Both the position numbers and the translations under genes were made by a program. The notes under the pieces were generated by a model. The model saw nothing but the letters and a program-made list of their open reading frames with translations, searched no databases and had not been told where the DNA came from. From IMG/VR virus record IMGVR_UViG_3300042317_001568, positions 62,001 through 126,000 of that record: 64,000 nt of DNA; one strand, 5' to 3'. Within the stretch, counting starts at the first letter, position 1. Every line of letters starts with the position of its first letter. Positions 3,582 to 58,071 of the stretch are shown one piece after another.

Positions 3582-4568
3582 ATGGCTGTTATCGCTACGC
3601 CGGTCGCCCACCCCATTGTCCAGTGCTGCGATAACGCTGCGCAGCCTGTTTTGACGCCAGTCACTTGCGCGGGACAAAACGTGCTCAGCGCCGTTGTTTC
3701 AACTGTGAACGGCCAGCCGGTCACAGGACGCATGCAGTCAATCTCAATTACACAAGGCCAGTGCGCTACGATTGAGTGGCAGATGCGCGATCAGTCTGGC
3801 GTGCCGGTTAACTTATCTGCATGTTCCGCGACGCCGTTCGCCATCGTGTTACGGTTAAAAGAGCAACTGTCGTGGGGAAACGTCAATTCGCCGCTTGAGG
3901 TTGCCGGCACTATTGCCGCTGCCGCAACCGGAAAAGTAACCGCGCAGCTTACGGCTGGAATGGTAGCTACGCCGGGTATTTACTACGCCGAATTTGCGTT
4001 AATTAATGTGCCGGCGCAAGCGCAAAACCAGCCGTGCGTTGTGTTTTCGAACACCTTTCATTTAATCATTAACCGCAGCAATTTTAACGGCGGCGCGGAA
4101 ATGGGCGGGCCCCCAAGTATCGCTGAAGTTCGTTTACACCTGCGCGACTCCAATCCCGGCGAAAGTTTTCTGCTCGACCGACTGATGTTTGACGACGCCG
4201 AAATCGCCCTCGCTATTACGCGTCCGGTGCAGTATTGGAACGAGATTCCGCCGCCGTTGGACCGCATTTACAACACACAAAATTTCCCGTTCCGCTATCA
4301 CTGGTTAGAAGGCATCTGCGCTAATCTGTTTTTGATGGTGGCTGAGCAGTTTCGCCGTAACCAGTTTAATTACTCTGCCGGCGGTCTTTCCGTAGACGAT
4401 CAAAACAAAGAAGGCGCTTACGAGCGTGCCGGCCAAACACGGTGGCAGGCTTATCGGGAGTGGGTGCGGGCGACAAAAGCCAGCATTAACCTTGAAAGCT
4501 GCTACGGCGAAGTTACGTCAAACTATAAGTACAGCGCCTACACCGACGCGATCCGAATTCGCTATTAG
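3582..4568 (+). CDS. Putative neck/head-tail adaptor protein with N-terminal beta-sandwich domain
   Basis: Position after the capsid genes; helical C-terminal region (EVRLHLRD...FDDAEIALA) typical of adaptor proteins. Confidence 0.55.
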   Translation: MAVIATPVAHPIVQCCDNAAQPVLTPVTCAGQNVLSAVVSTVNGQPVTGRMQSISITQGQCATIEWQMRDQSGVPVNLSACSATPFAIVLRLKEQLSWGNVNSPLEVAGTIAAAATGKVTAQLTAGMVATPGIYYAEFALINVPAQAQNQPCVVFSNTFHLIINRSNFNGGAEMGGPPSIAEVRLHLRDSNPGESFLLDRLMFDDAEIALAITRPVQYWNEIPPPLDRIYNTQNFPFRYHWLEGICANLFLMVAEQFRRNQFNYSAGGLSVDDQNKEGAYERAGQTRWQAYREWVRATKASINLESCYGEVTSNYKYSAYTDAIRIRY

Positions 4569-4692
4569 CGCATTCTAGAATCTGGAAAATGCGTCGTAAG
4601 TGCTTTGTTCCCTAGCACTTTCGCAATTCGCGAATTTGGAATATGGCGCTTGTCCGCAGTTCGCGAACCGTGGACAGCTGCGCGGACACTGG

Positions 4693-5412: not shown

Positions 5413-5457
5413 AGAAGGAGCGGGCACCAAAACCGGTGCTCGCTTTTTCTTAGCTAT
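5413..5457 (+). terminator. Intrinsic terminator followed by TTAGCTAT
   Basis: agaaggagcgggcacc-aaaacc-ggtgctcgctttttct. Confidence 0.75.
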
Positions 5458-5464
5458 CGGTGAC

Positions 5465-5493
5465 CTAAATTAGGCGCGATTTTGCGTCATATT
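5465..5493 (+). promoter_or_regulatory. Promoter-like motif CTAAAT-N17-CATATT, copy 2
   Basis: Repeated motif upstream of the AAA+ gene. Confidence 0.75.
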
Positions 5494-5529
5494 ATTTGTG
5501 TCCCCGTTTCCGCTATGAAGGAGCTTGCG

Positions 5530-6369
5530 ATGAGTATTGCAGACGGAGTGTGCGATCTTCTGCCCGGCTATTTCGCTCGACGAGGCGAGGCCCTGCTGGC
5601 CAGATGGATGCACGAGGCCCGCGGGAAGGAACCGCGCGGTGGTTTACTGGTCGGCCCGCCCGGCACCGGCAAGACGTTCTTTGCCGACGCGTTCGCCCGC
5701 GGCCGCAAGGCCGAGCAGGTGTTTATTCCGTGCCACCCGTGGCTCACGAATGAGGAGCTACATCAGGGTGTGGACATCGGCCGCGTGGCGGTCGGGGTCG
5801 AGCACGCCGACGAGGCGTACATCGACGGCCAGCTGCTGCGCGCTGTGCGCATGTCGCACGACTGCGACGTGGTTATCACGTTGGACGAGGTCGAAAAGGC
5901 TGGGTCGCGGTTTTACCCGCTTATCCTCGACTTCTTGCAGAATGGTCGGGTGCCTGATGCCCGCCACAAGCTGCACAGCGGCAACACGGCCCGGATGTTT
6001 ATCGTCCTGACCGCGAACGAAGAGGTTGACCTGCCCGAGGCCATTAAACGGCGCTGCTTTCGGGTAAACATGGGCTTTCTGCCCGAGCATGTCGAAACCG
6101 ATGTGCTGCGCAAGCAGACAGGCGCACCGGGAGGGGCCTGTCGCATCATTGTGCGCATGGCGAACGCAATCCGGCAGAACGGCGACTCCAAGCCGTCCCT
6201 GCAGGAGCTTCGTCACTTGCTTATGGCGCGAGACCTGTGCGTAAGCACGGACGACGTAGCCACTTTGATCGAAGCGTTTCTTGTAAAAGAAACCAAGGAC
6301 ACGGAGGCCCTTAAACAGGCATTCAGCAAACCCGAAGCTGTACTGTTCGGGGAGTTCAAAAGGAAGTAA
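5530..6369 (+). CDS. AAA+ ATPase, MoxR/AAA_5-like
   Basis: Walker A GPPGTGKT, Walker B ITLDEVEK, sensor I LTAN, Arg finger EAIKRRC; AAGGAG RBS favours ATG 5530. Confidence 0.85.
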   Translation: MSIADGVCDLLPGYFARRGEALLARWMHEARGKEPRGGLLVGPPGTGKTFFADAFARGRKAEQVFIPCHPWLTNEELHQGVDIGRVAVGVEHADEAYIDGQLLRAVRMSHDCDVVITLDEVEKAGSRFYPLILDFLQNGRVPDARHKLHSGNTARMFIVLTANEEVDLPEAIKRRCFRVNMGFLPEHVETDVLRKQTGAPGGACRIIVRMANAIRQNGDSKPSLQELRHLLMARDLCVSTDDVATLIEAFLVKETKDTEALKQAFSKPEAVLFGEFKRK

Positions 6370-6371
6370 CC

Positions 6372-7781
6372 ATGAGCCTGACACTGCGGAAGTTGCAGCG
6401 AATGCTGTCGAAGTCCGTGAAAACTACCCGCGATGTTAGGTTTACGGACCCGCGAGAGCGGGCAGAGTTCGCGGAGTTTATCAAGGGCGTATACGCCGAA
6501 GAATTTACGAGCCCGCTTCTTCGACAAGGGCACGTTCGCGAGAACTGCCCGTGCGGTAATTGCGGCCCCAAAACCGTGAACAACATCACGGCGCTTATTG
6601 ACCGGTTGACAAAGCGGCACGGCCATCGTGCCACACTCAGCCAGTTGCTGGAGCCCAGAAATAAGTCTGGGCGGGCTCAAGGCGGTAGCGGTAAATCAAA
6701 CGGAGCACCGCAGGAGGAGCCCCAGCAGGCACCTTCTGGCGGGTTTGATCCTCCGCCCGCCAAAGATACGGCCGCGGAACCACCGCAGCCCGAGAACTGG
6801 GAACCAACTCCCGCCGCCCAAGAAACTCCAAAACCAAAAACTGAGCGTGAAAGGCTTTCCGACGAGGAAAAAGATTTACGTGCGCGGTTAAAGGAATTGG
6901 AGAAGCAGAAAGCCGCCGCGAAAGCACGCGGCAGTCTGCAAGCTTCGGCGATAGATGTTGTGATAAAGAAAGCCAGAAAGCAGCTGAAGGACGCCCGGAA
7001 ACAGGCATCTAAAATCAGCGGCGTTGCTGGTATTGAGAGTGCTCCGTCGTTGGAGGCTCGACGACGCGCAGCCGGCACACATGGCCGCCTGCGGGTCGTT
7101 CCGCCTCAACTGCGGAACAAAACAGCGGAACTCATTAATAAGTTAGTGCATGAAAGCGGCGCAGCTGGTGACCGCCTCACGCCTATCCCAATTTTGAGTG
7201 CGCGAAAAGTTGTCAAGAGGATGCTTGTCCGGCGTCCACTTGGTAACGCGTTTAAGGAGGACAGCAACGCCGGTCGTCCCGTCACGCTGTTCTTGCCCGA
7301 CGTCTCGCCGTCTTGCGCCCGACAGGCTCAAGCGGCGTGTGACGTCGCTAATGCGGCAGGGTACGCTGGAGTCTCTGGCTCTGACGTACTGGTTTTCCCA
7401 CACTCTAACGGAGAGGTGGAGGAAGATTACGTGCCGTGGTTTAACGGTCGACCCAACTTGGCAAACTTGACGAAAACAGAAGCGCTGTTTTCCGAGATAA
7501 CAAGCGGTCGGTCGCGGTATAACATCCGGATAGTAGTCGCCATTGGCGACCACGACGCCGCGGAGTTGTATCGAGAAATCGCGGCGCTAAAAAAAGTGGT
7601 GCGATTAGTGTGGTTGCACAATATTCCAGTGAGTCGTCGTCGACCCACGGTTGTGCCGTCTGACGCCAATAACTTGTACGGCGAGAATTGGACAGCTGAA
7701 ACACGCAACAAGGTCACAATGATCTACGGTTGCGTTGATCAGGCGTCTATTCTCGGCGGGCTAGAACTGGCTCTTTCTTAA
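6372..7781 (+). CDS. vWA-domain partner of the MoxR-type ATPase
   Basis: MIDAS-like DVSPS and VVAIGD; Pro/Glu/Gly-rich linker; begins 2 nt after the ATPase stop. Confidence 0.65.
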   Translation: MSLTLRKLQRMLSKSVKTTRDVRFTDPRERAEFAEFIKGVYAEEFTSPLLRQGHVRENCPCGNCGPKTVNNITALIDRLTKRHGHRATLSQLLEPRNKSGRAQGGSGKSNGAPQEEPQQAPSGGFDPPPAKDTAAEPPQPENWEPTPAAQETPKPKTERERLSDEEKDLRARLKELEKQKAAAKARGSLQASAIDVVIKKARKQLKDARKQASKISGVAGIESAPSLEARRRAAGTHGRLRVVPPQLRNKTAELINKLVHESGAAGDRLTPIPILSARKVVKRMLVRRPLGNAFKEDSNAGRPVTLFLPDVSPSCARQAQAACDVANAAGYAGVSGSDVLVFPHSNGEVEEDYVPWFNGRPNLANLTKTEALFSEITSGRSRYNIRIVVAIGDHDAAELYREIAALKKVVRLVWLHNIPVSRRRPTVVPSDANNLYGENWTAETRNKVTMIYGCVDQASILGGLELALS

Positions 7782-7836
7782 GCGCGCACCATTAACAGCG
7801 GCACTCCGTTTTACGCCGCAGGAGGTAATTTATGCA

Positions 7837-8411
7837 CTGGCCTAGATAAAGCGATGCCCGGGGTAATCAGCCCGGAGCCTTCGTCTGCAGGGATTAATTG
7901 TTTTCCATGTAGCCGAAATAAAGGGACGACAAACAAACACGGGTTCTTGAAGGCTCGTGAGGACAAAAGTCGTAAACATAGCGGAGCTGTGTCCGACGCT
8001 TTGAGGGGACAATGGCAGGTTAGTCCCACAGGGGAGACACGAGACTTTATTGCGGAACGTCGCCTAATAGCGAAACGCCGCGACATCGTTTCGGTCAAAC
8101 CAGACCGGCCCCGGATTTTGTAACGCGGTTTGCTGCCTAGAAGCGGCCGCGCATATCCCCTGTCGAAAGCGCGCTCGATGGGGGGTCGCTCAATCTGGGA
8201 CTTTTCGTCTGTGCGAAGGTCACGCGGGCCGTCGTGCCCGCGGAATATCACAGAACTATACTAACACGCGCTATTCGTCTAGTCCGGGTAGCGTAGGCTT
8301 TCTCGGTGCGCCTGCTTTAAGCGGTTGCCGCCACGTTCGGCGAGCACTGAGCCACTTCCGCTGAGCAATTGGCGGAGGGGGGAATCGAAATGGCCCCTTT
8401 GGGGCCGTTTC
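7837..8411 (+). ncRNA. Large structured non-coding RNA candidate, family unassigned
   Basis: Long-range closing helix 7837-7853/8269-8287 and at least 10 nested helices; wobble pairs read as G-U on the + strand; no credible CDS. Confidence 0.7.
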
Positions 8412-8420
8412 TTTAGCTAT
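8387..8420 (+). terminator. Intrinsic terminator followed by TTAGCTAT
   Basis: gaaatggcccc-ttt-ggggccgtttc-ttt. Confidence 0.75.
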
Positions 8421-8443
8421 CAGCGCTCCAGTAGAATAATGGT

Positions 8444-9673
8444 ATGACGTACCAAAAAACTTTTCCGTTCCGCCGTGTTTCCGTGGATCACATGGTCCGC
8501 GGAACAACCCGGGTTTGGTGGCAACTTGAGCCGCTATTCCGCGATCCCGGGCCGCATGTCTACCAGCTGCAAGTCAGCAAATCTGGTTTAACAAACTCTT
8601 CAGACTGGGCCGATGTCGGGCCGCCGTTAACAAACGCTTATGTGGCGTATGACTCGGCGTGGCGACTATCCGGATATTCCCTGCTTACGCATTATCGCGT
8701 TAAATTAACAACGCCAACAACTGTCTATGTCTCGCAATCTGCAGGTTGCTTTGGCGAGTTAAACGAGCGCGACTGGGTGTTGTCGCAAGAAATTATCCGT
8801 AAAGAACAGCTACGGCATCAATTTGTGTCGACGCCCGGGTATCTTATTAAGGCTATGCGTTTCGGAAAGCCGTGCCCGCGCTGCCGAGAAAAGCTGACGC
8901 AGGAAGTACTCGACTCGTATTGCCCGGTCTGTAGCGGCACTGGTTTTGAGGTCGGCTATTTTCCGCCGCAGCCGTTGCAATGCTGGGATTTATCTTTACA
9001 GACAATTCAAGAAGAAGGCGATGCGCAGGCCCGCGGGCCCACACGCGACAACGCCGTTGTCCAAGCACGCGTAATTGGTTTTCCGGCTTTAAATAAATAT
9101 GACGTGTGGGTAAACGCCGCCAGCGACGAACGCTGGATAATTGACACAATTCAAGTTGTCGCGGCTATGAGGAATGTGCCGCTGGTGTATCAGGTGCAGT
9201 TAAACCTCGCGCCGTTTACAGACGGTATTTACACATTTGAAGTCGGCGGAGAGTCGCCCACGCGCGACCCGTCGACAGAAGGCCCTACTGTTGGGTGCGG
9301 CGATGTCATCTTAAACCATAACTACAACGGCAACGATCGGTACGCCTACCTGTCTCCGACGGGGTGCCCAATCAGCGGCGCTACGGTATACGTGTTTAAC
9401 AGAAACGTATATGACGTAAACGGCCCGCAAATTGCCCGGACTATGGCGCTCGCAAAAACGAGCACAACCGCAAACGGCCGCTGGGTGCAGGGCGTTAATG
9501 TAAATCCCGGCAACTACGCTATTCTTTATGAAAAGACTGGCGAGTTCGGCCCAGACGTAGATTTTGTAACTGTGGTTGCGCCACCGCCTACCGCATCTGT
9601 TAAAACAGCGACACCCGCAAAGAGCGCCCCGACATGGCCGACGAAAAAAGAAAACGACTTCTGGACCATATAA
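8444..9673 (+). CDS. Putative head-closure/neck protein with CxxC...CxxC insert and C-terminal beta-sandwich
   Basis: CPRC...CPVCSGTGF; lies between the adaptor and tail-completion genes. Confidence 0.55.
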   Translation: MTYQKTFPFRRVSVDHMVRGTTRVWWQLEPLFRDPGPHVYQLQVSKSGLTNSSDWADVGPPLTNAYVAYDSAWRLSGYSLLTHYRVKLTTPTTVYVSQSAGCFGELNERDWVLSQEIIRKEQLRHQFVSTPGYLIKAMRFGKPCPRCREKLTQEVLDSYCPVCSGTGFEVGYFPPQPLQCWDLSLQTIQEEGDAQARGPTRDNAVVQARVIGFPALNKYDVWVNAASDERWIIDTIQVVAAMRNVPLVYQVQLNLAPFTDGIYTFEVGGESPTRDPSTEGPTVGCGDVILNHNYNGNDRYAYLSPTGCPISGATVYVFNRNVYDVNGPQIARTMALAKTSTTANGRWVQGVNVNPGNYAILYEKTGEFGPDVDFVTVVAPPPTASVKTATPAKSAPTWPTKKENDFWTI

Positions 9674-10582: not shown

Positions 10583-13500
10583 ATGTCGAGCTACGTAAAA
10601 CCGCAAGTTCTTGTATTCCAAGAATTCTCAATCGTCCCCACCGAAATCACTGAGCCGCTGCGCGCGCACATCACCGGCCCGAACGGCGTGCTGCACCGGT
10701 ATAGCGACTCTGATGAAAAACAAACCATCCGCCTCGGCGCATATAACCAAACTGACGACGTTTGCTACCCGTGGCCGCAGCGTAAGCCCGGCTCGCTTGT
10801 CGACCTTGATTACGTCAAGCTGTACATCGACAACGCGCTGCTCAAGTATTACGAGCACAACCTGAGCGACGTCGAAACCACAATCACCGCTGTAGAAACA
10901 AACCAGCGAGTGCTTCCGAACTGGATCACGTCGGACGACCTCTCCTTTAAGTCGAACACCGCGGCGTACCCGCGATCGACAGAGTTTAATGACCGCGACG
11001 TTCAACTTGGTGACGTTGTTTATCTGCGCACGGTAAGCGCCGATAACAACTGCGAAGAGACCACACTGTGGACATCTGTCGCGGGCTTTGCTTCGGACAA
11101 CGTCCCGTCGCGCATTAAGCCGGCTGTGGTCGACGACAACAACTGCGCGGGCCATAGCGCTACAACTAGCTCAGCGCAAGTTCACGCTGACGGCGGGGCG
11201 CTCGACAACTCGGTTGTAATCAACGCCGTCGATGGTTCGCTCTACAACGGCCTGCCCAGCGGCGACGTAGAAGAGACTTATACCATTACAGTCGTAAAGA
11301 GCTCGATTAGCGGATGCAACGCTGCGCGACTTCGCGTTCGATCGGCTTCTCGCCGCGACGACGTCGCCGAAGTAACAGCGGCGGCTTTCGGCTCGCCGAC
11401 AACTATCGGTACGCGCGGCCTCAAAGTCACGTTTGCCGTGACTGCCGGCAGCGGCGACACTTTCCTCGTCGGCCAGCAGTGGACTGTAAGCGTAACTCAA
11501 AGCGTCACCGCCACGACTATCGCGTCGGCCGCCGACGGTAACTTCACTATGGACGGCGATGACATCCTCGGCGCCTATACCGGCGACAAGAACGACATTT
11601 ACGTCGTCGAAGTCACCAAGGGCGGTTACTGGGCTGCTCTCCCGGCGATCACTGTTCGCACGGTAAAAGGTCTTGATTTCTCCGGCCCAACCGAAGTAAC
11701 TGCCTCTGGTGTAGAGGTCGGTATCGGCACCAGCGGCGTAAAAATTGTGTTGACGTCGACACAGGGTCTCCGTAAGGGTGACAAGTTCTACGTCACTGTT
11801 GTTTCGGCCAAGGCCGGCGAAGTGCGCAAGCTCATTCTCCGTGACGACCTCCCGGTTGCTATGCGAGAAAAGTCGATGCTCGCCAAAAAGCTCCACACGG
11901 CCAAGCTCGCTTCGACAGCCAACGTCGTCAGCCTGAGCGGCACGCCAACTATTGACGGCGTCGCGCTCCAGTCGGGCGACAAGGTTCTCTTAAAGAATCA
12001 AACCAACGCTGCGCAGAACGGTCTGTATGTCGTTCCGGCCGCGTCGGGCGACCCGGCTACCGTGGGCAATTGGACACGGACCACTGGCAATGACGTACTC
12101 ATCGCCGGCTCGTTTGTCCGCGTTACGCACGGCTCGACACAGGCTACCAAGGGTTACCTGTTAACTAACACCGGGACGTTGAATTTAGGTACCACGACGT
12201 TGACGTTTGTAAACGACGACGACGCTGATGTGCTGAAGTTCCCGTCGCTCGACCTGAAGCTGTTCATCAAGGACAACATTCAGGTTTCGAAGAATCGTAT
12301 CGGTTACGCCCCGATGACCAACTACTGGTTTGAAGATACGCAGATTTGCGTACAAGAAGGCATTGTGGCGTATCACCCAGAGTGGACAGATGCCGGCGCA
12401 GAGCAGCCGCTGCCCGTTGAGGGCGGCACGCTGTACGCCGAATACCGCGAGTGGGTGTTCGACCTGAGCGACGAAGTTAACGCCATGAGCGACGTGGCCG
12501 ATCTTGATAACATTCCCGGCCAGCTTCACCCGGACAACCCGCTGAAGTGGGGCGTTTACAAGGCGCTTGCTAATTCGAACGGTACCGCTGTGAAGTACAC
12601 AGCCGTGCACGATCCGAAAGAGCTGGACAGCTGGGTGCAGGTCCTTGAGCGTCTCAAGGGTCGCGACGACTTCTATAACCTTGTCCCGATGACGTTTGAC
12701 CGTATGGTGCAGAACCTGTGGGCCGCCCACATCGGCGCCGAGTCGAACGAGTACGCTAACAACTGGAAAGCTGGTTACTTTGCGCTCCGCGCCGAGACTC
12801 ATCAGCTGGTTGTCGGCGAAGGCGCCCGAATTCGGGGCGTTCTTGCCGAGGTTATGCCCGAAGCCGTTCTGGCCACGCTTGCCGATGACCCGAACGCGAC
12901 GAACACGCAGTACACGCTGCTGCAAGTTCCGACCGGCAACAACAACGCCAGCGGTTACTTTATTACAAATGACGTACGCCCCGGCGACATCGTTCGGTAC
13001 AACTACACCACCGACGGTTTCGGCGACGTGCAGTACGAAGAGTACGTTGTAGACAAGGTTCTGTCGGAAAACTCGCTGCTCCTGTACACCGGCGGTGACG
13101 TCGCTGTAACAACGCCGCAGCAGTTTGAAATCTGGCACAACCGGAACCGCAACGAAGTTGCCGACCACATTGCCGAACAGGCTGGTTCGCTGTCGAACCG
13201 TCGGGTTTGCGCCGTGTGGCCGGATCAGGTCGGCGAGGCCGGCACAACACAGCCCGGCTATTACTTAGCCGCTGCGCTGGCCGGTCTGACGTCGGGCGTG
13301 GTCCCGCACCAGCCGCTTACCAACGTAGAGGTAGCCGGTTTCGACGACTTCACGCGGTCCTACAAGTACTTCAATGAAACGCAACTTAACCGTATGGCTG
13401 AAGCTGGCGTCTGGATTGTGACGGAAGACCGTGACGGCACGCCGCACACGCGGCACGCGCTGACGACGGACAACCTCGACCTGAATCGTCGGGAAGAGAT

Positions 13501-13792
13501 GATCCGCCGCAACGTCGACTCGATGTCGTACCTGTTCTACCGTCGTCTGCGTCCGTACATCGGCCGCACGAACGCGCAGCCCGGAATGGTTAAGGTGCTA
13601 GAGTTCGAAGTAACGCGCGTCATCGATTTCTTGAAGTCTAACGGCAACACTGCAGAACTCGGCTCGCAGTTAATCAACGGCTCGATCCGCAAGCTGCAGA
13701 TTCATCCGCTGCTGAAGGATCGGATCGAGATTGTTCTTGATCTGGTTGTTCCGGCTCCGCTCAACAACATCGAACTGCACTTAGTGGTCTAA
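10583..13792 (+). CDS. Tail sheath protein (1069 aa, with inserted domains)
   Basis: N-terminal YVKPQVLVFQE; sheath-like C-terminus (PHQPLTN...RRNVD...P.PLNNIEL); followed by a tube-sized gene. Confidence 0.85.
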   Translation: MSSYVKPQVLVFQEFSIVPTEITEPLRAHITGPNGVLHRYSDSDEKQTIRLGAYNQTDDVCYPWPQRKPGSLVDLDYVKLYIDNALLKYYEHNLSDVETTITAVETNQRVLPNWITSDDLSFKSNTAAYPRSTEFNDRDVQLGDVVYLRTVSADNNCEETTLWTSVAGFASDNVPSRIKPAVVDDNNCAGHSATTSSAQVHADGGALDNSVVINAVDGSLYNGLPSGDVEETYTITVVKSSISGCNAARLRVRSASRRDDVAEVTAAAFGSPTTIGTRGLKVTFAVTAGSGDTFLVGQQWTVSVTQSVTATTIASAADGNFTMDGDDILGAYTGDKNDIYVVEVTKGGYWAALPAITVRTVKGLDFSGPTEVTASGVEVGIGTSGVKIVLTSTQGLRKGDKFYVTVVSAKAGEVRKLILRDDLPVAMREKSMLAKKLHTAKLASTANVVSLSGTPTIDGVALQSGDKVLLKNQTNAAQNGLYVVPAASGDPATVGNWTRTTGNDVLIAGSFVRVTHGSTQATKGYLLTNTGTLNLGTTTLTFVNDDDADVLKFPSLDLKLFIKDNIQVSKNRIGYAPMTNYWFEDTQICVQEGIVAYHPEWTDAGAEQPLPVEGGTLYAEYREWVFDLSDEVNAMSDVADLDNIPGQLHPDNPLKWGVYKALANSNGTAVKYTAVHDPKELDSWVQVLERLKGRDDFYNLVPMTFDRMVQNLWAAHIGAESNEYANNWKAGYFALRAETHQLVVGEGARIRGVLAEVMPEAVLATLADDPNATNTQYTLLQVPTGNNNASGYFITNDVRPGDIVRYNYTTDGFGDVQYEEYVVDKVLSENSLLLYTGGDVAVTTPQQFEIWHNRNRNEVADHIAEQAGSLSNRRVCAVWPDQVGEAGTTQPGYYLAAALAGLTSGVVPHQPLTNVEVAGFDDFTRSYKYFNETQLNRMAEAGVWIVTEDRDGTPHTRHALTTDNLDLNRREEMIRRNVDSMSYLFYRRLRPYIGRTNAQPGMVKVLEFEVTRVIDFLKSNGNTAELGSQLINGSIRKLQIHPLLKDRIEIVLDLVVPAPLNNIELHLVV

Positions 13793-57998: not shown

Positions 57999-58071
57999 GC
58001 CGGTGTAGCTCAGTTGGTAGAGCCGCTGATTTGTAATCAGCAGGTCGTCGGTTCGAGTCCGACCGCCGGCT
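57999..58071 (+). tRNA. trnT: tRNA-Thr(UGU), CCA not encoded
   Basis: GCCGGTG/CGCCGGC acceptor stem; D arm GCTC-AGTTGGTA-GAGC; anticodon arm GCTGA-TTTGTAA-TCAGC; T arm GTCGG-TTCGAGT-CCGAC. Confidence 0.95.

What the first reader, a model, noticed from the sequence alone, without database searches (positions are those of the whole stretch)
7798..8420. Large, multi-branched structured RNA downstream of an AAA+/vWA pair
Seen: a ~660-nt gap in an otherwise tightly packed genome, filled with nested helices. These are a closing helix 7837-7853/8269-8287, ccggg/cccgg (~7858-7875), gagccttcg/tgaaggctc (7875-7883/7948-7956), aaagtc/gacttt (7966-7971/8043-8048), gggac/gtccc (8006-8010/8023-8027), cggtc/gaccg, and cccggatt/aatctggg (8110-8117/8192-8199) enclosing two further hairpins. 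Then come gacttttcg/cgaaggtc, cgcgggc/gcccgcg (8223-8229/8236-8242), three 3' hairpins and a terminator. Wobbles read as G-U on the + strand, which implies an RNA of that polarity. Known: phages carry large ncRNAs of unknown function (GOLLD, ROOL), and MoxR-type AAA+/vWA pairs are chaperone-like remodellers. Inference: this is an unassigned large RNA, probably co-transcribed with the ATPase-vWA pair, possibly a new ATPase-vWA-RNA ribonucleoprotein system.
Basis: partly seen in the sequence, partly recalled or inferred. Interest (0 to 1): 0.88.

Follow-up and report, generated by a model that had tools for sequence, protein, structure and literature searches.

The report
New large structured RNA in jumbo phages
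A 620-base stretch between two genes of an uncultured 205-kb phage encodes a large, intricately folded RNA that matches no known RNA family, is kept in all 19 related phage sequences whose DNA could be read, and is a new example of the rare "ornate" large RNAs whose jobs are still unknown.

Summary
The core observation holds. Window 7782-8443 is the largest non-coding gap in a 96% coding window. It encodes a + strand RNA of about 620 nt (about 7798-8414) ending in an intrinsic terminator.

- It folds better than shuffles only on the + strand.
- It has no conserved ORF.
- It is more conserved than the flanking proteins.
- It sits at the same position in all 19 distinct related metagenomic phage loci whose DNA could be read.

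Covariation is strong: 37 of 42 pairs in the 3' domain and 37 of 50 in the central domain change on both sides, with 92-96% of cells paired against 32-48% for slid controls. I also found two pseudoknots, a loop-loop contact that covaries in every clade, and a hairpin loop that switches between the palindromes GCGCGC and GUGCAC. A Shine-Dalgarno site plus a 3-5 codon mini-ORF at the 5' edge is nearly universal.

No Rfam 15 family matches, in the window or in relatives. Matching terminator/promoter-like modules bracket AAA+, the vWA-like gene and the RNA, so co-transcription is likely. A physical ATPase-vWA-RNA complex is untested. It is a new class of ornate phage RNA; its function is inferred only.

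The parts
5420..5471 (+). Upstream boundary of the transcription unit. Terminator hairpin 5420-5428/5435-5443 plus T-run, then the promoter-like motif TAGCTATCGGTG (5451-5462) and TAAATT (5466-5471).
   Evidence: Read directly from the sequence. The motif matches the one after the RNA. It is conserved upstream of the AAA+ gene in L021, L023, L024, L026, L030, L013 and L015. Function as a promoter is inferred.
5482..6369 (+). MoxR-type AAA+ ATPase gene. The ORF as listed starts at TTG 5482. Relatives of 275-284 aa suggest the true start is an ATG about 16 codons later.
   Evidence: Pfam AAA_5 at 4.3e-13, 49.9 bits against a cut-off of 22. The best solved relative is NorQ, 9qhd_A, E 4e-7 over residues 54-281. 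NCBIfam gives MadB and GvpN below their cut-offs.
6372..7781 (+). 469-aa protein with a divergent vWA-like C-terminal domain (residues about 300-469), an invariant D310-x-S312-x-S314, a helical middle and an acidic disordered linker (residues 97-139).
   Evidence: Invariant columns. AF2 models. For the C-terminal domain, many of the best-ranked Foldseek hits are vWA folds, all weak (best E 0.013, probability 0.89). The whole-chain top hit is a chain of the NorQD complex, E 0.12. No Pfam VWA model hits any of 46 family members.
7798..7819 (+). 5' hairpin (stem 7798-7802/7815-7819) directly after the stop codon of the vWA-like gene. It has no U-tract.
   Evidence: A hairpin of differing sequence sits at this place in most relatives (alignment; 5' regions). 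A role as a 5' protective or processing structure is inferred.
7820..7849 (+). Shine-Dalgarno AGGAGG (7820-7825), ATG 7832, and a mini-ORF of 5 codons (MHWPR, stop at 7847-7849).
   Evidence: A strong SD, a 4-7 nt spacer, ATG or GTG, 2-4 further codons and a stop are present in 18 of the 19 related loci that were read. The peptide is not conserved: MDWP, MSWIR, MIWH, MHDP, MNEH, MNGT, MPFP, MFT, MTWP, MGTQ, MPFT.
7852..8010 (+). 5' domain. P1 is 7852-7861/7872-7883 (invariant). P2 is 7885-7893/7903-7912. Pseudoknot PK1 pairs the P2 loop 7898-7903 with 7931-7936. P3 is 7938-7943/7954-7959. Pseudoknot PK2 pairs the P3 loop 7946-7952 with 7999-8005.
   Evidence: P2 folds as a hairpin on its own in all 10 sequences and P3 in 9 of 10 (L029's lowest-energy fold differs, though the P3 pairing remains possible), despite different sequences. 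Compensatory changes are listed. For PK1, UUGUUU/AAACAA becomes UUGUGU/ACACAA. For PK2, CUUGAAG/CUUCAAG, GUCAGAA/UUUUGAC and GUCGCAG/UUGCGAC are seen. This comes from inspecting a MAFFT alignment, not from a statistical test.
8006..8198 (+). Central domain. P5 is 8006-8010/8023-8027. The long-range helix is 8014-8020/8104-8110. Hairpin 8048-8055/8078-8085 plus 8060-8063/8070-8073 carries the near-invariant motif GGRACGUC...GAAACGCC. Helix 8111-8117/8192-8198 encloses hairpins H8 (8124-8129/8146-8151) and H9 (8156-8166/8175-8185).
   Evidence: Model R2 (50 pairs) hits distant clades at E 6e-14 to 2e-6. 91.9% of cells are paired against 32-42% for slid partners. 37 of 50 pairs change on both sides, and 0 of 500 shuffles reach the observed values.
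8137..8141 (+). 5' partner (CUAGA, in the H8 loop) of the loop-loop contact KL1. The 3' partner is UCUAG at 8278-8282, in the loop of the first 3'-domain hairpin.
   Evidence: The two loops stay complementary while changing: CUAGA/UCUAG, GAUAG/CUAUC, GGUAG/CUACC, AUUAG/CUAAU, GAUCAG/CUGAUC, AAUAGG/CCUAUU, GGUUGG/CCAACC, UUUAGG/CCUAAA, GGAUUG/CAAUCC. Own-partner duplex energy is -5.6 against -3.4 kcal/mol when partners are permuted (1 of 5000). Whether the contact is within one molecule or between molecules cannot be told.
8167..8174 (+). H9 loop AAGCGCGC, containing the self-complementary hexamer 8169-8174.
   Evidence: The hexamer is GCGCGC in the window, L021, L023, L024 and L026, and GUGCAC in L027-L031. 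Two mirrored changes keep the palindrome. This is the signature used to support symmetric intermolecular kissing loops in OLE and GOLLD (PMC12286853). It reflects one evolutionary event only, and H9 is absent from distant clades.
8199..8262 (+). Variable linker. The window has two hairpins here, 8199-8207/8214-8221 and 8223-8229/8236-8242. Relatives have a shorter, different sequence.
   Evidence: Alignment A3. The second hairpin exists only in the window, L021 and L023.
8263..8414 (+). 3' domain, the part best conserved across clades. Hairpin H1 is 8268-8277/8285-8294. The long-range helix is 8302-8312/8339-8351. A further hairpin is 8352-8364/8369-8381. The intrinsic terminator is 8387-8396/8401-8411 (core GGCCCC/GGGGCC, tail GUUUCUUU).
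   Evidence: Model R1 (42 pairs) hits every clade at E <= 1.6e-12. 95.5% of cells are paired against 40-48% for slid partners. 37 of 42 pairs change on both sides.
8414..8446 (+). Promoter-like element TAGCTATCAGCG (8414-8425) plus TAGAAT (8432-8437), then the ATG (8444) of the 409-aa gene 7 nt after the -10-like hexamer, with no Shine-Dalgarno site.
   Evidence: This exact form occurs once in the window and is present at this place in most of the related loci. Promoter function and leaderless translation are inferred.

Best explanation
The gap encodes a discrete, trans-acting, highly structured non-coding RNA of about 620 nt. It is a new class of "ornate" large phage RNA.

Shown:
- The RNA is read from the + strand.
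- It has three domains held together by at least two pseudoknots and one long-range loop-loop contact.
- It ends at an intrinsic terminator.
- It is kept at one genomic position in all 19 related loci whose DNA could be read, from every clade of the 469-aa protein tree from which DNA was obtained.

Inferred:
- It is made as the 3' end of a three-part transcription unit: MoxR-type AAA+ gene, vWA-like gene, RNA. This unit lies inside the late virion-gene block.
- A 5' hairpin plus a strong ribosome-binding site with a 3-5 codon mini-ORF marks its 5' edge. This most likely loads a ribosome, which stabilises the RNA or times its folding.
- The folded RNA self-associates, at least into dimers, through the palindromic H9 loop. 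KL1 may also act between molecules. It would then act as an RNA or RNA-protein assembly in the way ROOL, GOLLD and OLE form homo-oligomers.

My probabilities: genuine functional structured RNA 0.95; trans-acting rather than a cis regulator 0.6; self-association 0.4; direct partnership with the AAA+/vWA-like pair 0.2. The confidence given for this explanation (0.6) is for the core claim: a discrete trans-acting structured RNA of a new class.
For: - Strand-specific folding: z = -2.99 on + against -0.26 on -. G.U cells outnumber A.C cells by 129 to 17.
- No conserved ORF.
- Nucleotide identity of the gap is 78% among five phages whose flanking protein is 56-89% identical.
- A gene-free gap of 500-1100 nt follows the vWA-like gene in every locus looked at.
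- Covariation: 62 of 110 RNAalifold pairs show double changes. For the 3' domain, 95.5% of cells are paired and 37 of 42 pairs have double changes. For the central domain the figures are 91.9% and 37 of 50. Both are far above the slid and shuffled controls.
- Pseudoknots and KL1.
- Palindrome switch in the H9 loop, with the published precedent.
- The mini-ORF with SD in 18 of 19 related loci.
- The operon bracket of matching terminator/promoter-like modules.
- No Rfam family.
- Protein-independent motif scans of IMG/VR find the RNA only in this phage group, always beside the vWA-like gene.
Against: - No transcript data exist, so the ends, abundance and stability of the RNA are inferred.
- The pair counts were made on alignments fitted to the models, with only 16-22 related sequences, which inflates them.
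- The 5' domain, the pseudoknots and KL1 rest on inspection and one permutation test.
- The palindrome switch is a single evolutionary event, and H9 is missing from distant clades.
- The G-run before the terminator could pair with the terminator's 5' arm. A regulated terminator is therefore not excluded.
- Linkage to AAA+/vWA cannot be separated from synteny of the whole module within one lineage.
- No cultured phage carries the module, so nothing is known from experiments.
Confidence: 0.6

Rival explanations
1. The RNA is the nucleic-acid subunit or substrate of a ribonucleoprotein built with the neighbouring MoxR-type ATPase and vWA-like protein. The vWA-like protein would bind the RNA or a protein on it, and the ATPase would remodel or assemble the particle. 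This would resemble the way AAA_5/MIDAS machines act on pre-ribosomes, or the way Ro60, which has a vWA domain, binds Y RNA. Both comparisons are from my own knowledge.
For: The three parts are adjacent in all 19 read loci and are bracketed by matching terminator/promoter-like modules. RNA-motif scans never find the RNA away from the vWA-like gene. The ATPase is of the MoxR class, which normally works with a vWA partner.
Against: The whole module from capsid to sheath is syntenic in one lineage, so adjacency carries little weight. The vWA assignment is weak: no Pfam hit in 46 members, and Foldseek E >= 0.013. No RNA-binding domain was detected in either protein. There are no interaction data.
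Confidence: 0.2
2. The element is a giant cis-acting leader or attenuator. Its fold, perhaps sensed through translation of the mini-ORF, decides whether the 3' hairpin terminates transcription or lets it run into the 409-aa gene and the tail genes.
For: The RNA ends in a terminator directly upstream of the tail-gene block. A short translated leader ORF is a classical feature of attenuators. The conserved G-run at 8374-8381 can pair either with 8352-8359 or with the C-run of the terminator's 5' arm (read from the sequence; R1 structure).
Against: About 600 nt with three domains, pseudoknots and a long-range loop contact is far beyond any known attenuator. The mini-ORF lies about 540 nt from the terminator, and its peptide and codons are not conserved. 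A conserved promoter-like element lies between the terminator and the next gene, so that gene need not depend on read-through. No Rfam leader or riboswitch matches.
Confidence: 0.12
3. The region is only a structured 3' untranslated tail that protects the AAA+/vWA mRNA from 3' exonucleases, or it is a DNA-level signal such as a packaging or replication site.
For: It sits at the 3' end of the unit and ends in a stable hairpin.
Against: A protective tail needs one hairpin, not 140 or more conserved pairs plus tertiary contacts. Sequence conservation exceeds that of the coding flanks. The strand asymmetry of wobble pairs and of folding energy argues for RNA, not DNA.
Confidence: 0.05

Closest known systems
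ROOL and GOLLD RNAs (large ornate RNAs of phages and prophages)
   Same: - Phage-encoded, 600-800 nt, multi-domain, with pseudoknots and covarying loop-loop contacts.
- The 3' part is well conserved, the 5' part less so, and a hypervariable linker lies between conserved parts.
- Loop contacts first seen as covariation turned out to be bridges between molecules (PMC12286853).
- No protein partner or function is known.
   Different: - No sequence or structure match to either Rfam model.
- It is not near tRNA genes; the only tRNA is 50 kb away. It is fixed inside a virion-gene operon behind an AAA+/vWA-like pair.
- It carries a ribosome-binding site and a mini-ORF at its 5' edge.
- Multimerisation here is only inferred.
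OLE RNA (about 600 nt ornate RNA of Bacillota, dimeric)
   Same: Similar size. A hairpin loop switches between palindromes, the signature of the symmetric kissing loop in the OLE dimer. OLE works in a ribonucleoprotein and has links to a ribosomal protein (PMC12054373, title and abstract only).
   Different: OLE is cellular rather than viral and has different partner proteins. There is no Rfam match.
phi29 packaging RNA (pRNA)
   Same: Here KL1 covaries in every clade, and the gene lies in the virion module beside an ATPase.
   Different: pRNA is about 170 nt, lies at the genome end and works with a packaging ATPase of another class. No Rfam match to pRNA was found. Whether KL1 acts between molecules is unknown.
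Retroviral dimerisation-initiation kissing loop
   Same: The hairpin loop has two leading adenines followed by a GC-rich six-base palindrome, and the same two variants occur, GCGCGC and GUGCAC (my own knowledge for the comparison; for the loop).
   Different: This is a resemblance of motif only, with no relation by descent and no dimer shown here.
MoxR AAA+ / vWA pairs (NorQ-NorD, CbbQ-CbbO, RavA-ViaA)
   Same: The ATPase matches AAA_5, and NorQ is its best solved relative. The next gene has a DxSxS motif and a vWA-like fold. The genes are adjacent, as in those systems.
   Different: Known pairs remodel metalloenzymes or Rubisco, and none is known to have an RNA partner (my own knowledge). The vWA-like protein hits no Pfam VWA model.

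Membership tests
Any Rfam 15 family (including GOLLD, ROOL, OLE, HEARO, raiA, pRNA, tmRNA, RNase P, 6S, group I and II introns, riboswitches, leaders) | A covariance-model match at or near the family's gathering score | tested here: not met
   Only the tRNA at 57999 passes gathering in the window. At E <= 10 on 7700-8500, the only matches are a terminator look-alike (STnc540, 17.6 bits against 38) and SNORA57 (15 against 40). Nothing consistent appears in eight relatives at E <= 5.
tmRNA | A tRNA-like domain plus a tag-peptide reading frame without a start codon | tested here: not met
   ARAGORN finds no tmRNA in the window. The mini-ORF has its own SD and ATG.
Conserved structured non-coding RNA (generic) | Base pairs maintained by compensatory changes above controls | tested here: met
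   37 of 42 and 37 of 50 pairs change on both sides. 92-96% of cells are paired against 32-48% for slid partners. 0 of 500 shuffles reach the observed values. Caveat: the alignments were fitted to the model and the sequences are related.
Conserved structured non-coding RNA (generic) | No protein-coding signal | tested here: met
   No open frame is shared among 17 homologous gaps, and substitutions are not concentrated at third codon positions.
Homo-oligomeric ornate RNAs (ROOL/GOLLD/OLE type) | The RNA assembles into defined multimers | not testable with these tools
   Indirect evidence only: the palindrome switch GCGCGC/GUGCAC in the H9 loop and the covarying loop-loop contact KL1. This needs native gels, mass photometry or cryo-EM.
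Homo-oligomeric ornate RNAs (ROOL/GOLLD/OLE type) | Location near tRNA islands in phages or prophages (typical of ROOL and GOLLD) | tested here: not met
   The one tRNA in the window lies 50 kb away. The RNA lies between virion-module genes in every locus.
Intrinsic terminator | A GC-rich hairpin followed by a U-tract on the RNA strand | tested here: met
   Stem 8387-8396/8401-8411 with tail GUUUCUUU. All 10 stem pairs covary, and relatives have 7-8 U.
MoxR-class AAA+ ATPase (gene 5482-6369) | Pfam AAA_5 above its cut-off, and closest solved relatives of the MoxR class | tested here: met
   AAA_5 scores 49.9 bits against a cut-off of 22. NorQ is the best PDB sequence match. The NCBIfam equivalogs MadB and GvpN fall far below their cut-offs, so there is no finer assignment.
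von Willebrand A (vWA) domain (gene 6372-7781) | A match to a VWA profile | tested here: not met
   No Pfam VWA-type family hits any of 46 members at E <= 0.1. No PDB sequence-profile hit was found. PHROGs and NCBIfam give none.
von Willebrand A (vWA) domain (gene 6372-7781) | The MIDAS motif DxSxS and an alpha/beta vWA fold | tested here: inconclusive
   D310, S312 and S314 are invariant in 46 sequences. The C-terminal model has pLDDT 86. Its top Foldseek hits are vWA folds (TFIIH p44, integrin I and beta-I domains, vWF A1), but with E 0.013-0.3 and TM 0.3-0.48. The whole-chain top hit is a NorQD-complex chain at E 0.12.

The most novel reading that the evidence does not exclude
The RNA is a self-assembling ring or cage. 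The operon's own MoxR-type ATPase and MIDAS-bearing partner build or remodel it. It is used late in infection, either as an assembly device for the virion (a much larger counterpart of phi29 pRNA) or to capture ribosomes through its conserved ribosome-binding site. This would be the first ATP-driven RNA-protein machine of this kind in a phage, and the first ornate large RNA with identified protein partners and a testable role.
Probability: 0.15. Interest if true: 0.92.

Novelty: new variant of a known kind. Interest (0 to 1): 0.76.

Why it matters
Large RNAs with complex folds of unknown function are rare. OLE, GOLLD, ROOL, HEARO and raiA are the usual list, and each new class has led to new structural biology.

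This one comes with features the others lack:
- A fixed place in an operon with two candidate protein partners.
- A conserved ribosome-binding site and mini-ORF.
- A loop-loop contact that covaries through at least nine sequence variants.
- A palindromic loop that predicts dimerisation.

These give direct, cheap experiments: transcribe it, test its oligomeric state, co-express it with the two proteins. They could say what such an RNA is for. The finding also shows that uncultured jumbo phages of environmental metagenomes hold unassigned RNA classes that protein-centred annotation passes over as an empty gap.

Tried and rejected
- **Rfam.** Gathering and permissive scans of the window and eight relatives gave no family.
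- **tmRNA or tRNA-like element.** ARAGORN finds none.
- **Hidden protein gene.** The window's 89-aa + ORF and 146-aa - ORF hit no Pfam family and are not kept in relatives.
- **Cultured phages.** blastn of the RNA and tblastn of the 469-aa protein against 50,697 phage records found nothing. The sheath protein finds only distant jumbo phages.
- **Bacterial and archaeal genomes.** The 30-nt RNA motif gave more than 120 hits, mostly in high-GC Actinobacteria. All match only the motif itself under nhmmer, so they are chance. My estimate of the chance rate was too low for GC-rich genomes.
- **Metagenome scan with the protein alignment.** Only 3 loci were returned. Look-ups by exact protein were far more productive.
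- **Generic promoter idea.** I first took TAGCTATCAGCG as a general phage promoter. It is not frequent: 6 loose matches against 3.9 expected. However, three copies lie in this module, at 4561, 5451 and 8414.
- **A further tertiary helix.** The candidate 7860-7864/8108-8112 was rejected because both arms already sit in covarying helices.
- **GCGCGC in distant clades.** There it lies in a stem, not a loop, so the palindromic-loop argument is limited to the window's clade and its sister clade.
- **5' domain model.** RNAalifold misses P2 and P3 because of the pseudoknots and alignment shifts. I therefore built no third covariance model.
- **Whole-chain Foldseek of the 469-aa protein.** It was uninformative until the C-terminal domain was modelled alone.
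- **Literature.** Three full-text searches found no description of this RNA.
Full report
**Where we are**

The window is part of an uncultured phage. Identical sequence lies on three IMG/VR contigs, the longest 205,010 bp. Almost all genes are on the + strand and belong to the virion module:
- an HK97-fold capsid protein at 1704-2645 (weak);
- a 1069-aa tail sheath at 10583-13792.

The finding lies between ORF 6372-7781 (469 aa) and ORF 8444-9673 (409 aa). This 662-nt stretch is the largest non-coding region in a window that is 96% coding, once the spurious minus-strand ORF 7811-8251 is discounted.

- The + strand folds to -263 kcal/mol, z = -2.99 against dinucleotide shuffles. The - strand gives z = -0.26.
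- Neither the 89-aa + ORF nor the 146-aa - ORF inside the gap hits any family.
- Among 17 homologous gaps, the longest open frames differ in position, strand and frame. Substitutions show no codon periodicity.
- In predicted pairs, G.U cells outnumber A.C cells by 129 to 17 in the 10-sequence alignment, 70 to 5 in the 3' domain and 72 to 15 in the central domain. The transcript is therefore the + strand.

**Relatives**

The 469-aa protein has 106 homologs in metagenomes, none with a Pfam domain. I read DNA around 19 distinct relatives from every clade of the protein tree from which DNA was obtained, at 36-89% protein identity.

All show the same gene order: about 330 aa, about 200 aa, AAA+, the 469-aa homolog, a gene-free gap of 500-1100 nt, a roughly 410-aa gene, a 239-aa gene, then the sheath. 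Two further loci without DNA show gene-free gaps of 608 and 684 nt at the same place.

Among five phages whose flanking protein is 56-89% identical, the gap is 78% identical in nucleotides, with invariant runs of tens of bases. This is the opposite of what neutral spacer DNA would show.

**Structure**

RNAalifold on ten sequences predicts 110 pairs, 62 of them with compensatory double changes. I built two covariance models.

| Model | Region | Pairs | Hits in distant clades | Cells paired | Slid partners | Pairs changed on both sides |
|---|---|---|---|---|---|---|
| R1 (3' domain) | 8263-8416 | 42 | every clade, E <= 1.6e-12 | 95.5% | 40-48% | 37 of 42 |
| R2 (central domain) | 8004-8201 | 50 | E 6e-14 to 2e-6 | 91.9% | 32-42% | 37 of 50 |

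For both models, no shuffle out of 500 reached the observed values. These counts lean towards the model, because the alignments were fitted to it and the sequences are related. Even so, the margin is large.

The 5' domain is less conserved and contains pseudoknots, so I analysed it by hand.
- P2 (7885-7893/7903-7912) folds as a hairpin on its own in all ten sequences, and P3 (7938-7943/7954-7959) in nine of ten, despite unrelated sequences. L029's lowest-energy fold differs, though the P3 pairing remains possible.
- The P2 loop UUGUUU pairs with AAACAA at 7931-7936. One relative has UUGUGU/ACACAA.
- The P3 loop pairs with 7999-8005. Variants include CUUGAAG/CUUCAAG, GUCAGAA/UUUUGAC and GUCGCAG/UUGCGAC.

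**Tertiary contacts**

The loop of central hairpin H8 (CUAGA, 8137-8141) is complementary to the loop of the first 3'-domain hairpin (UCUAG, 8278-8282). The pair stays complementary through at least nine variants across all clades, including a matched one-base insertion, GAUCAG/CUGAUC. Own-partner duplexes are more stable than permuted ones, -5.6 against -3.4 kcal/mol, 1 of 5000 permutations.

The loop of hairpin H9 reads AAGCGCGC in five sequences and AAGUGCAC in five. Two mirrored substitutions keep a six-base palindrome. The cryo-EM study of OLE, ROOL and GOLLD used exactly this kind of palindrome switching to support symmetric kissing loops between molecules. It also found that loop contacts first detected by covariation were bridges between molecules (PMC12286853). 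Here it is a single evolutionary event, and H9 is missing from distant clades, where GCGCGC sits in a stem. I treat self-association as a lead with a probability of about 0.4.

- Supported: gggac/gtccc; cccggatt/aatctggg with its two inner hairpins; the 3' hairpins; the terminator.
- Invariant, so untestable: ccggg/cccgg.
- Lineage-specific linker hairpins: gacttttcg/cgaaggtc and cgcgggc/gcccgcg.
- Not supported: the closing helix 7837-7853/8269-8287; gagccttcg/tgaaggctc; aaagtc/gacttt; cggtc/gaccg. Each conflicts with a covarying alternative or fails in relatives.

**Edges of the RNA**

Directly after the stop codon of the 469-aa gene comes a hairpin without a U-tract (7798-7819). Next is AGGAGG (7820-7825), then ATG at 7832, a five-codon ORF and a stop. 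A strong SD, a 4-7 nt spacer, a start codon, 2-4 further codons and a stop occur in 18 of the 19 related loci, as in the window, but the peptide varies. The conserved feature is therefore ribosome loading and very early termination, only a few bases before P1.

The 3' end is a covarying hairpin with a U-tract (8387-8414).

**Transcription unit**

After the terminator comes TAGCTATCAGCG (8414-8425) and TAGAAT (8432-8437). The ATG of the next gene follows 7 nt later with no SD. This exact form occurs once in the window and is kept in most of the related loci.

The same arrangement lies just upstream of the AAA+ gene: terminator 5420-5443, T-run, TAGCTATCGGTG, TAAATT. It is conserved there in seven relatives from three clades. 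No copy of the module lies between the two; the generic scan flags only a weak terminator-like stem at 7758-7773, inside the conserved 3' end of the 469-aa gene. From sequence alone, then, AAA+, the 469-aa gene and the RNA form one unit.

**The two proteins**

The ATPase is a clear AAA_5 (MoxR-class) protein, with NorQ as its best solved relative.

The 469-aa protein is harder to place.
- No VWA profile hits any of 46 members, and a PDB profile search finds nothing.
- D310-x-S312-x-S314 is invariant.
- The C-terminal 175 residues model confidently (pLDDT 86) as an alpha/beta domain.
- Many of that domain's best-ranked Foldseek matches are vWA folds, all weak, the best at E 0.013.
- The whole chain's top match is a chain of the NorQD complex at E 0.12.

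"MoxR plus vWA-like partner" is therefore plausible but not established.

**What it is**

No Rfam 15 family matches the region or its relatives. ARAGORN finds no tmRNA. No cultured phage has the RNA or the 469-aa protein. Three literature searches found no description.

Two protein-independent motif scans of IMG/VR recover the RNA only in nine contigs of this phage group, always beside the vWA-like gene. The other matches to the second motif, in eleven further contigs, cover only the short hairpin motif. Hits of one motif in bacterial genomes are chance.

My conclusion is that this is a new class of large ornate phage RNA. It most resembles ROOL and GOLLD:
- phage-borne, about 600 nt, with pseudoknots and covarying loop contacts;
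- a conserved 3' domain, a less conserved 5' domain and a variable linker.

It differs in lying in a virion-gene operon behind an AAA+/vWA-like pair rather than near tRNAs, and in carrying a ribosome-binding site with a mini-ORF.

**How it most likely works**

Shown: a conserved, strand-specific, multi-domain fold with tertiary contacts and a terminator.

Inferred:
- It is transcribed late as the tail of the AAA+/vWA unit.
- The 5' hairpin and the ribosome on the mini-ORF protect the 5' edge or time the folding of P1.
- The folded RNA acts in trans as an assembly, at least a dimer.

Partnership with the two proteins is possible (0.2) but rests only on adjacency within one syntenic lineage. A giant attenuator remains a minority alternative (0.12). 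The G-run before the terminator has two possible partners, but the size of the fold, the distance of the mini-ORF from the terminator and the promoter-like element after the terminator argue against it.

**Limits**

- There are no transcript, structure-probing or interaction data.
- At most 22 related sequences were available.
- Covariance-model E-values are rough.
- The pseudoknots and the loop contact come from inspection plus one permutation test.
- The host is unknown.

Noticed in passing
window 4561-4582, 5451-5471, 8414-8437: A composite motif, (T-run) TAGCTATYRGYG, 5-6 nt, then TAGAAT or TAAATT, occurs three times in this module. Two copies lie directly after terminator hairpins. It does not fit sigma-70 spacing, so it may be a promoter for a phage-directed polymerase or sigma factor, or a regulator site next to a -10 box.
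   Followed up: partly
window 8432-8446; L160 5929-5943: The 409-aa gene starts 6-7 nt after the -10-like hexamer with no Shine-Dalgarno sequence, in the window and in a distant relative. Its mRNA may be leaderless.
   Followed up: no
window 10583-13792: The tail sheath protein is unusually long at 1069 aa. Only its C-terminal part matches sheath families. Residues about 438-544 match a domain found in phage decoration and fibre proteins. Its nearest cultured relatives are Vibrio phage D69-like phages of about 187 kb and Salmonella phage Arash, at 28% identity.
   Followed up: partly
window 6372-7781 (residues 97-139): The 469-aa protein has an acidic, low-complexity linker of about 40 residues (pLDDT below 50) between a small N-terminal domain and a long helical region.
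   Followed up: no
window 57999-58071: A single tRNA-Thr (anticodon TGT), the only Rfam and ARAGORN hit in the window.
   Followed up: no
window 5482 versus about 5530: The AAA+ ORF as listed starts at TTG 5482. Relatives of 275-284 aa have a GAAGGAG site before an ATG about 16 codons further on, which suggests the later start is the real one.
   Followed up: partly
L160 5387-6471: In this relative the gene caller left a 1085-nt gap. About 525 nt is the RNA. The rest is the start of the 409-aa homolog, which begins at 5941 but was called only from 6472, so it is either miscalled or disrupted there.
   Followed up: partly
window 8060-8078 and all relatives: The motif GGRACGUC, a short stem-loop, then GAAACGCC forms a near-invariant symmetric internal loop. 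It is the most conserved local feature of the central domain (16 of 16 at several positions). It fits no motif I could name and is a candidate protein or tertiary docking site.
   Followed up: no
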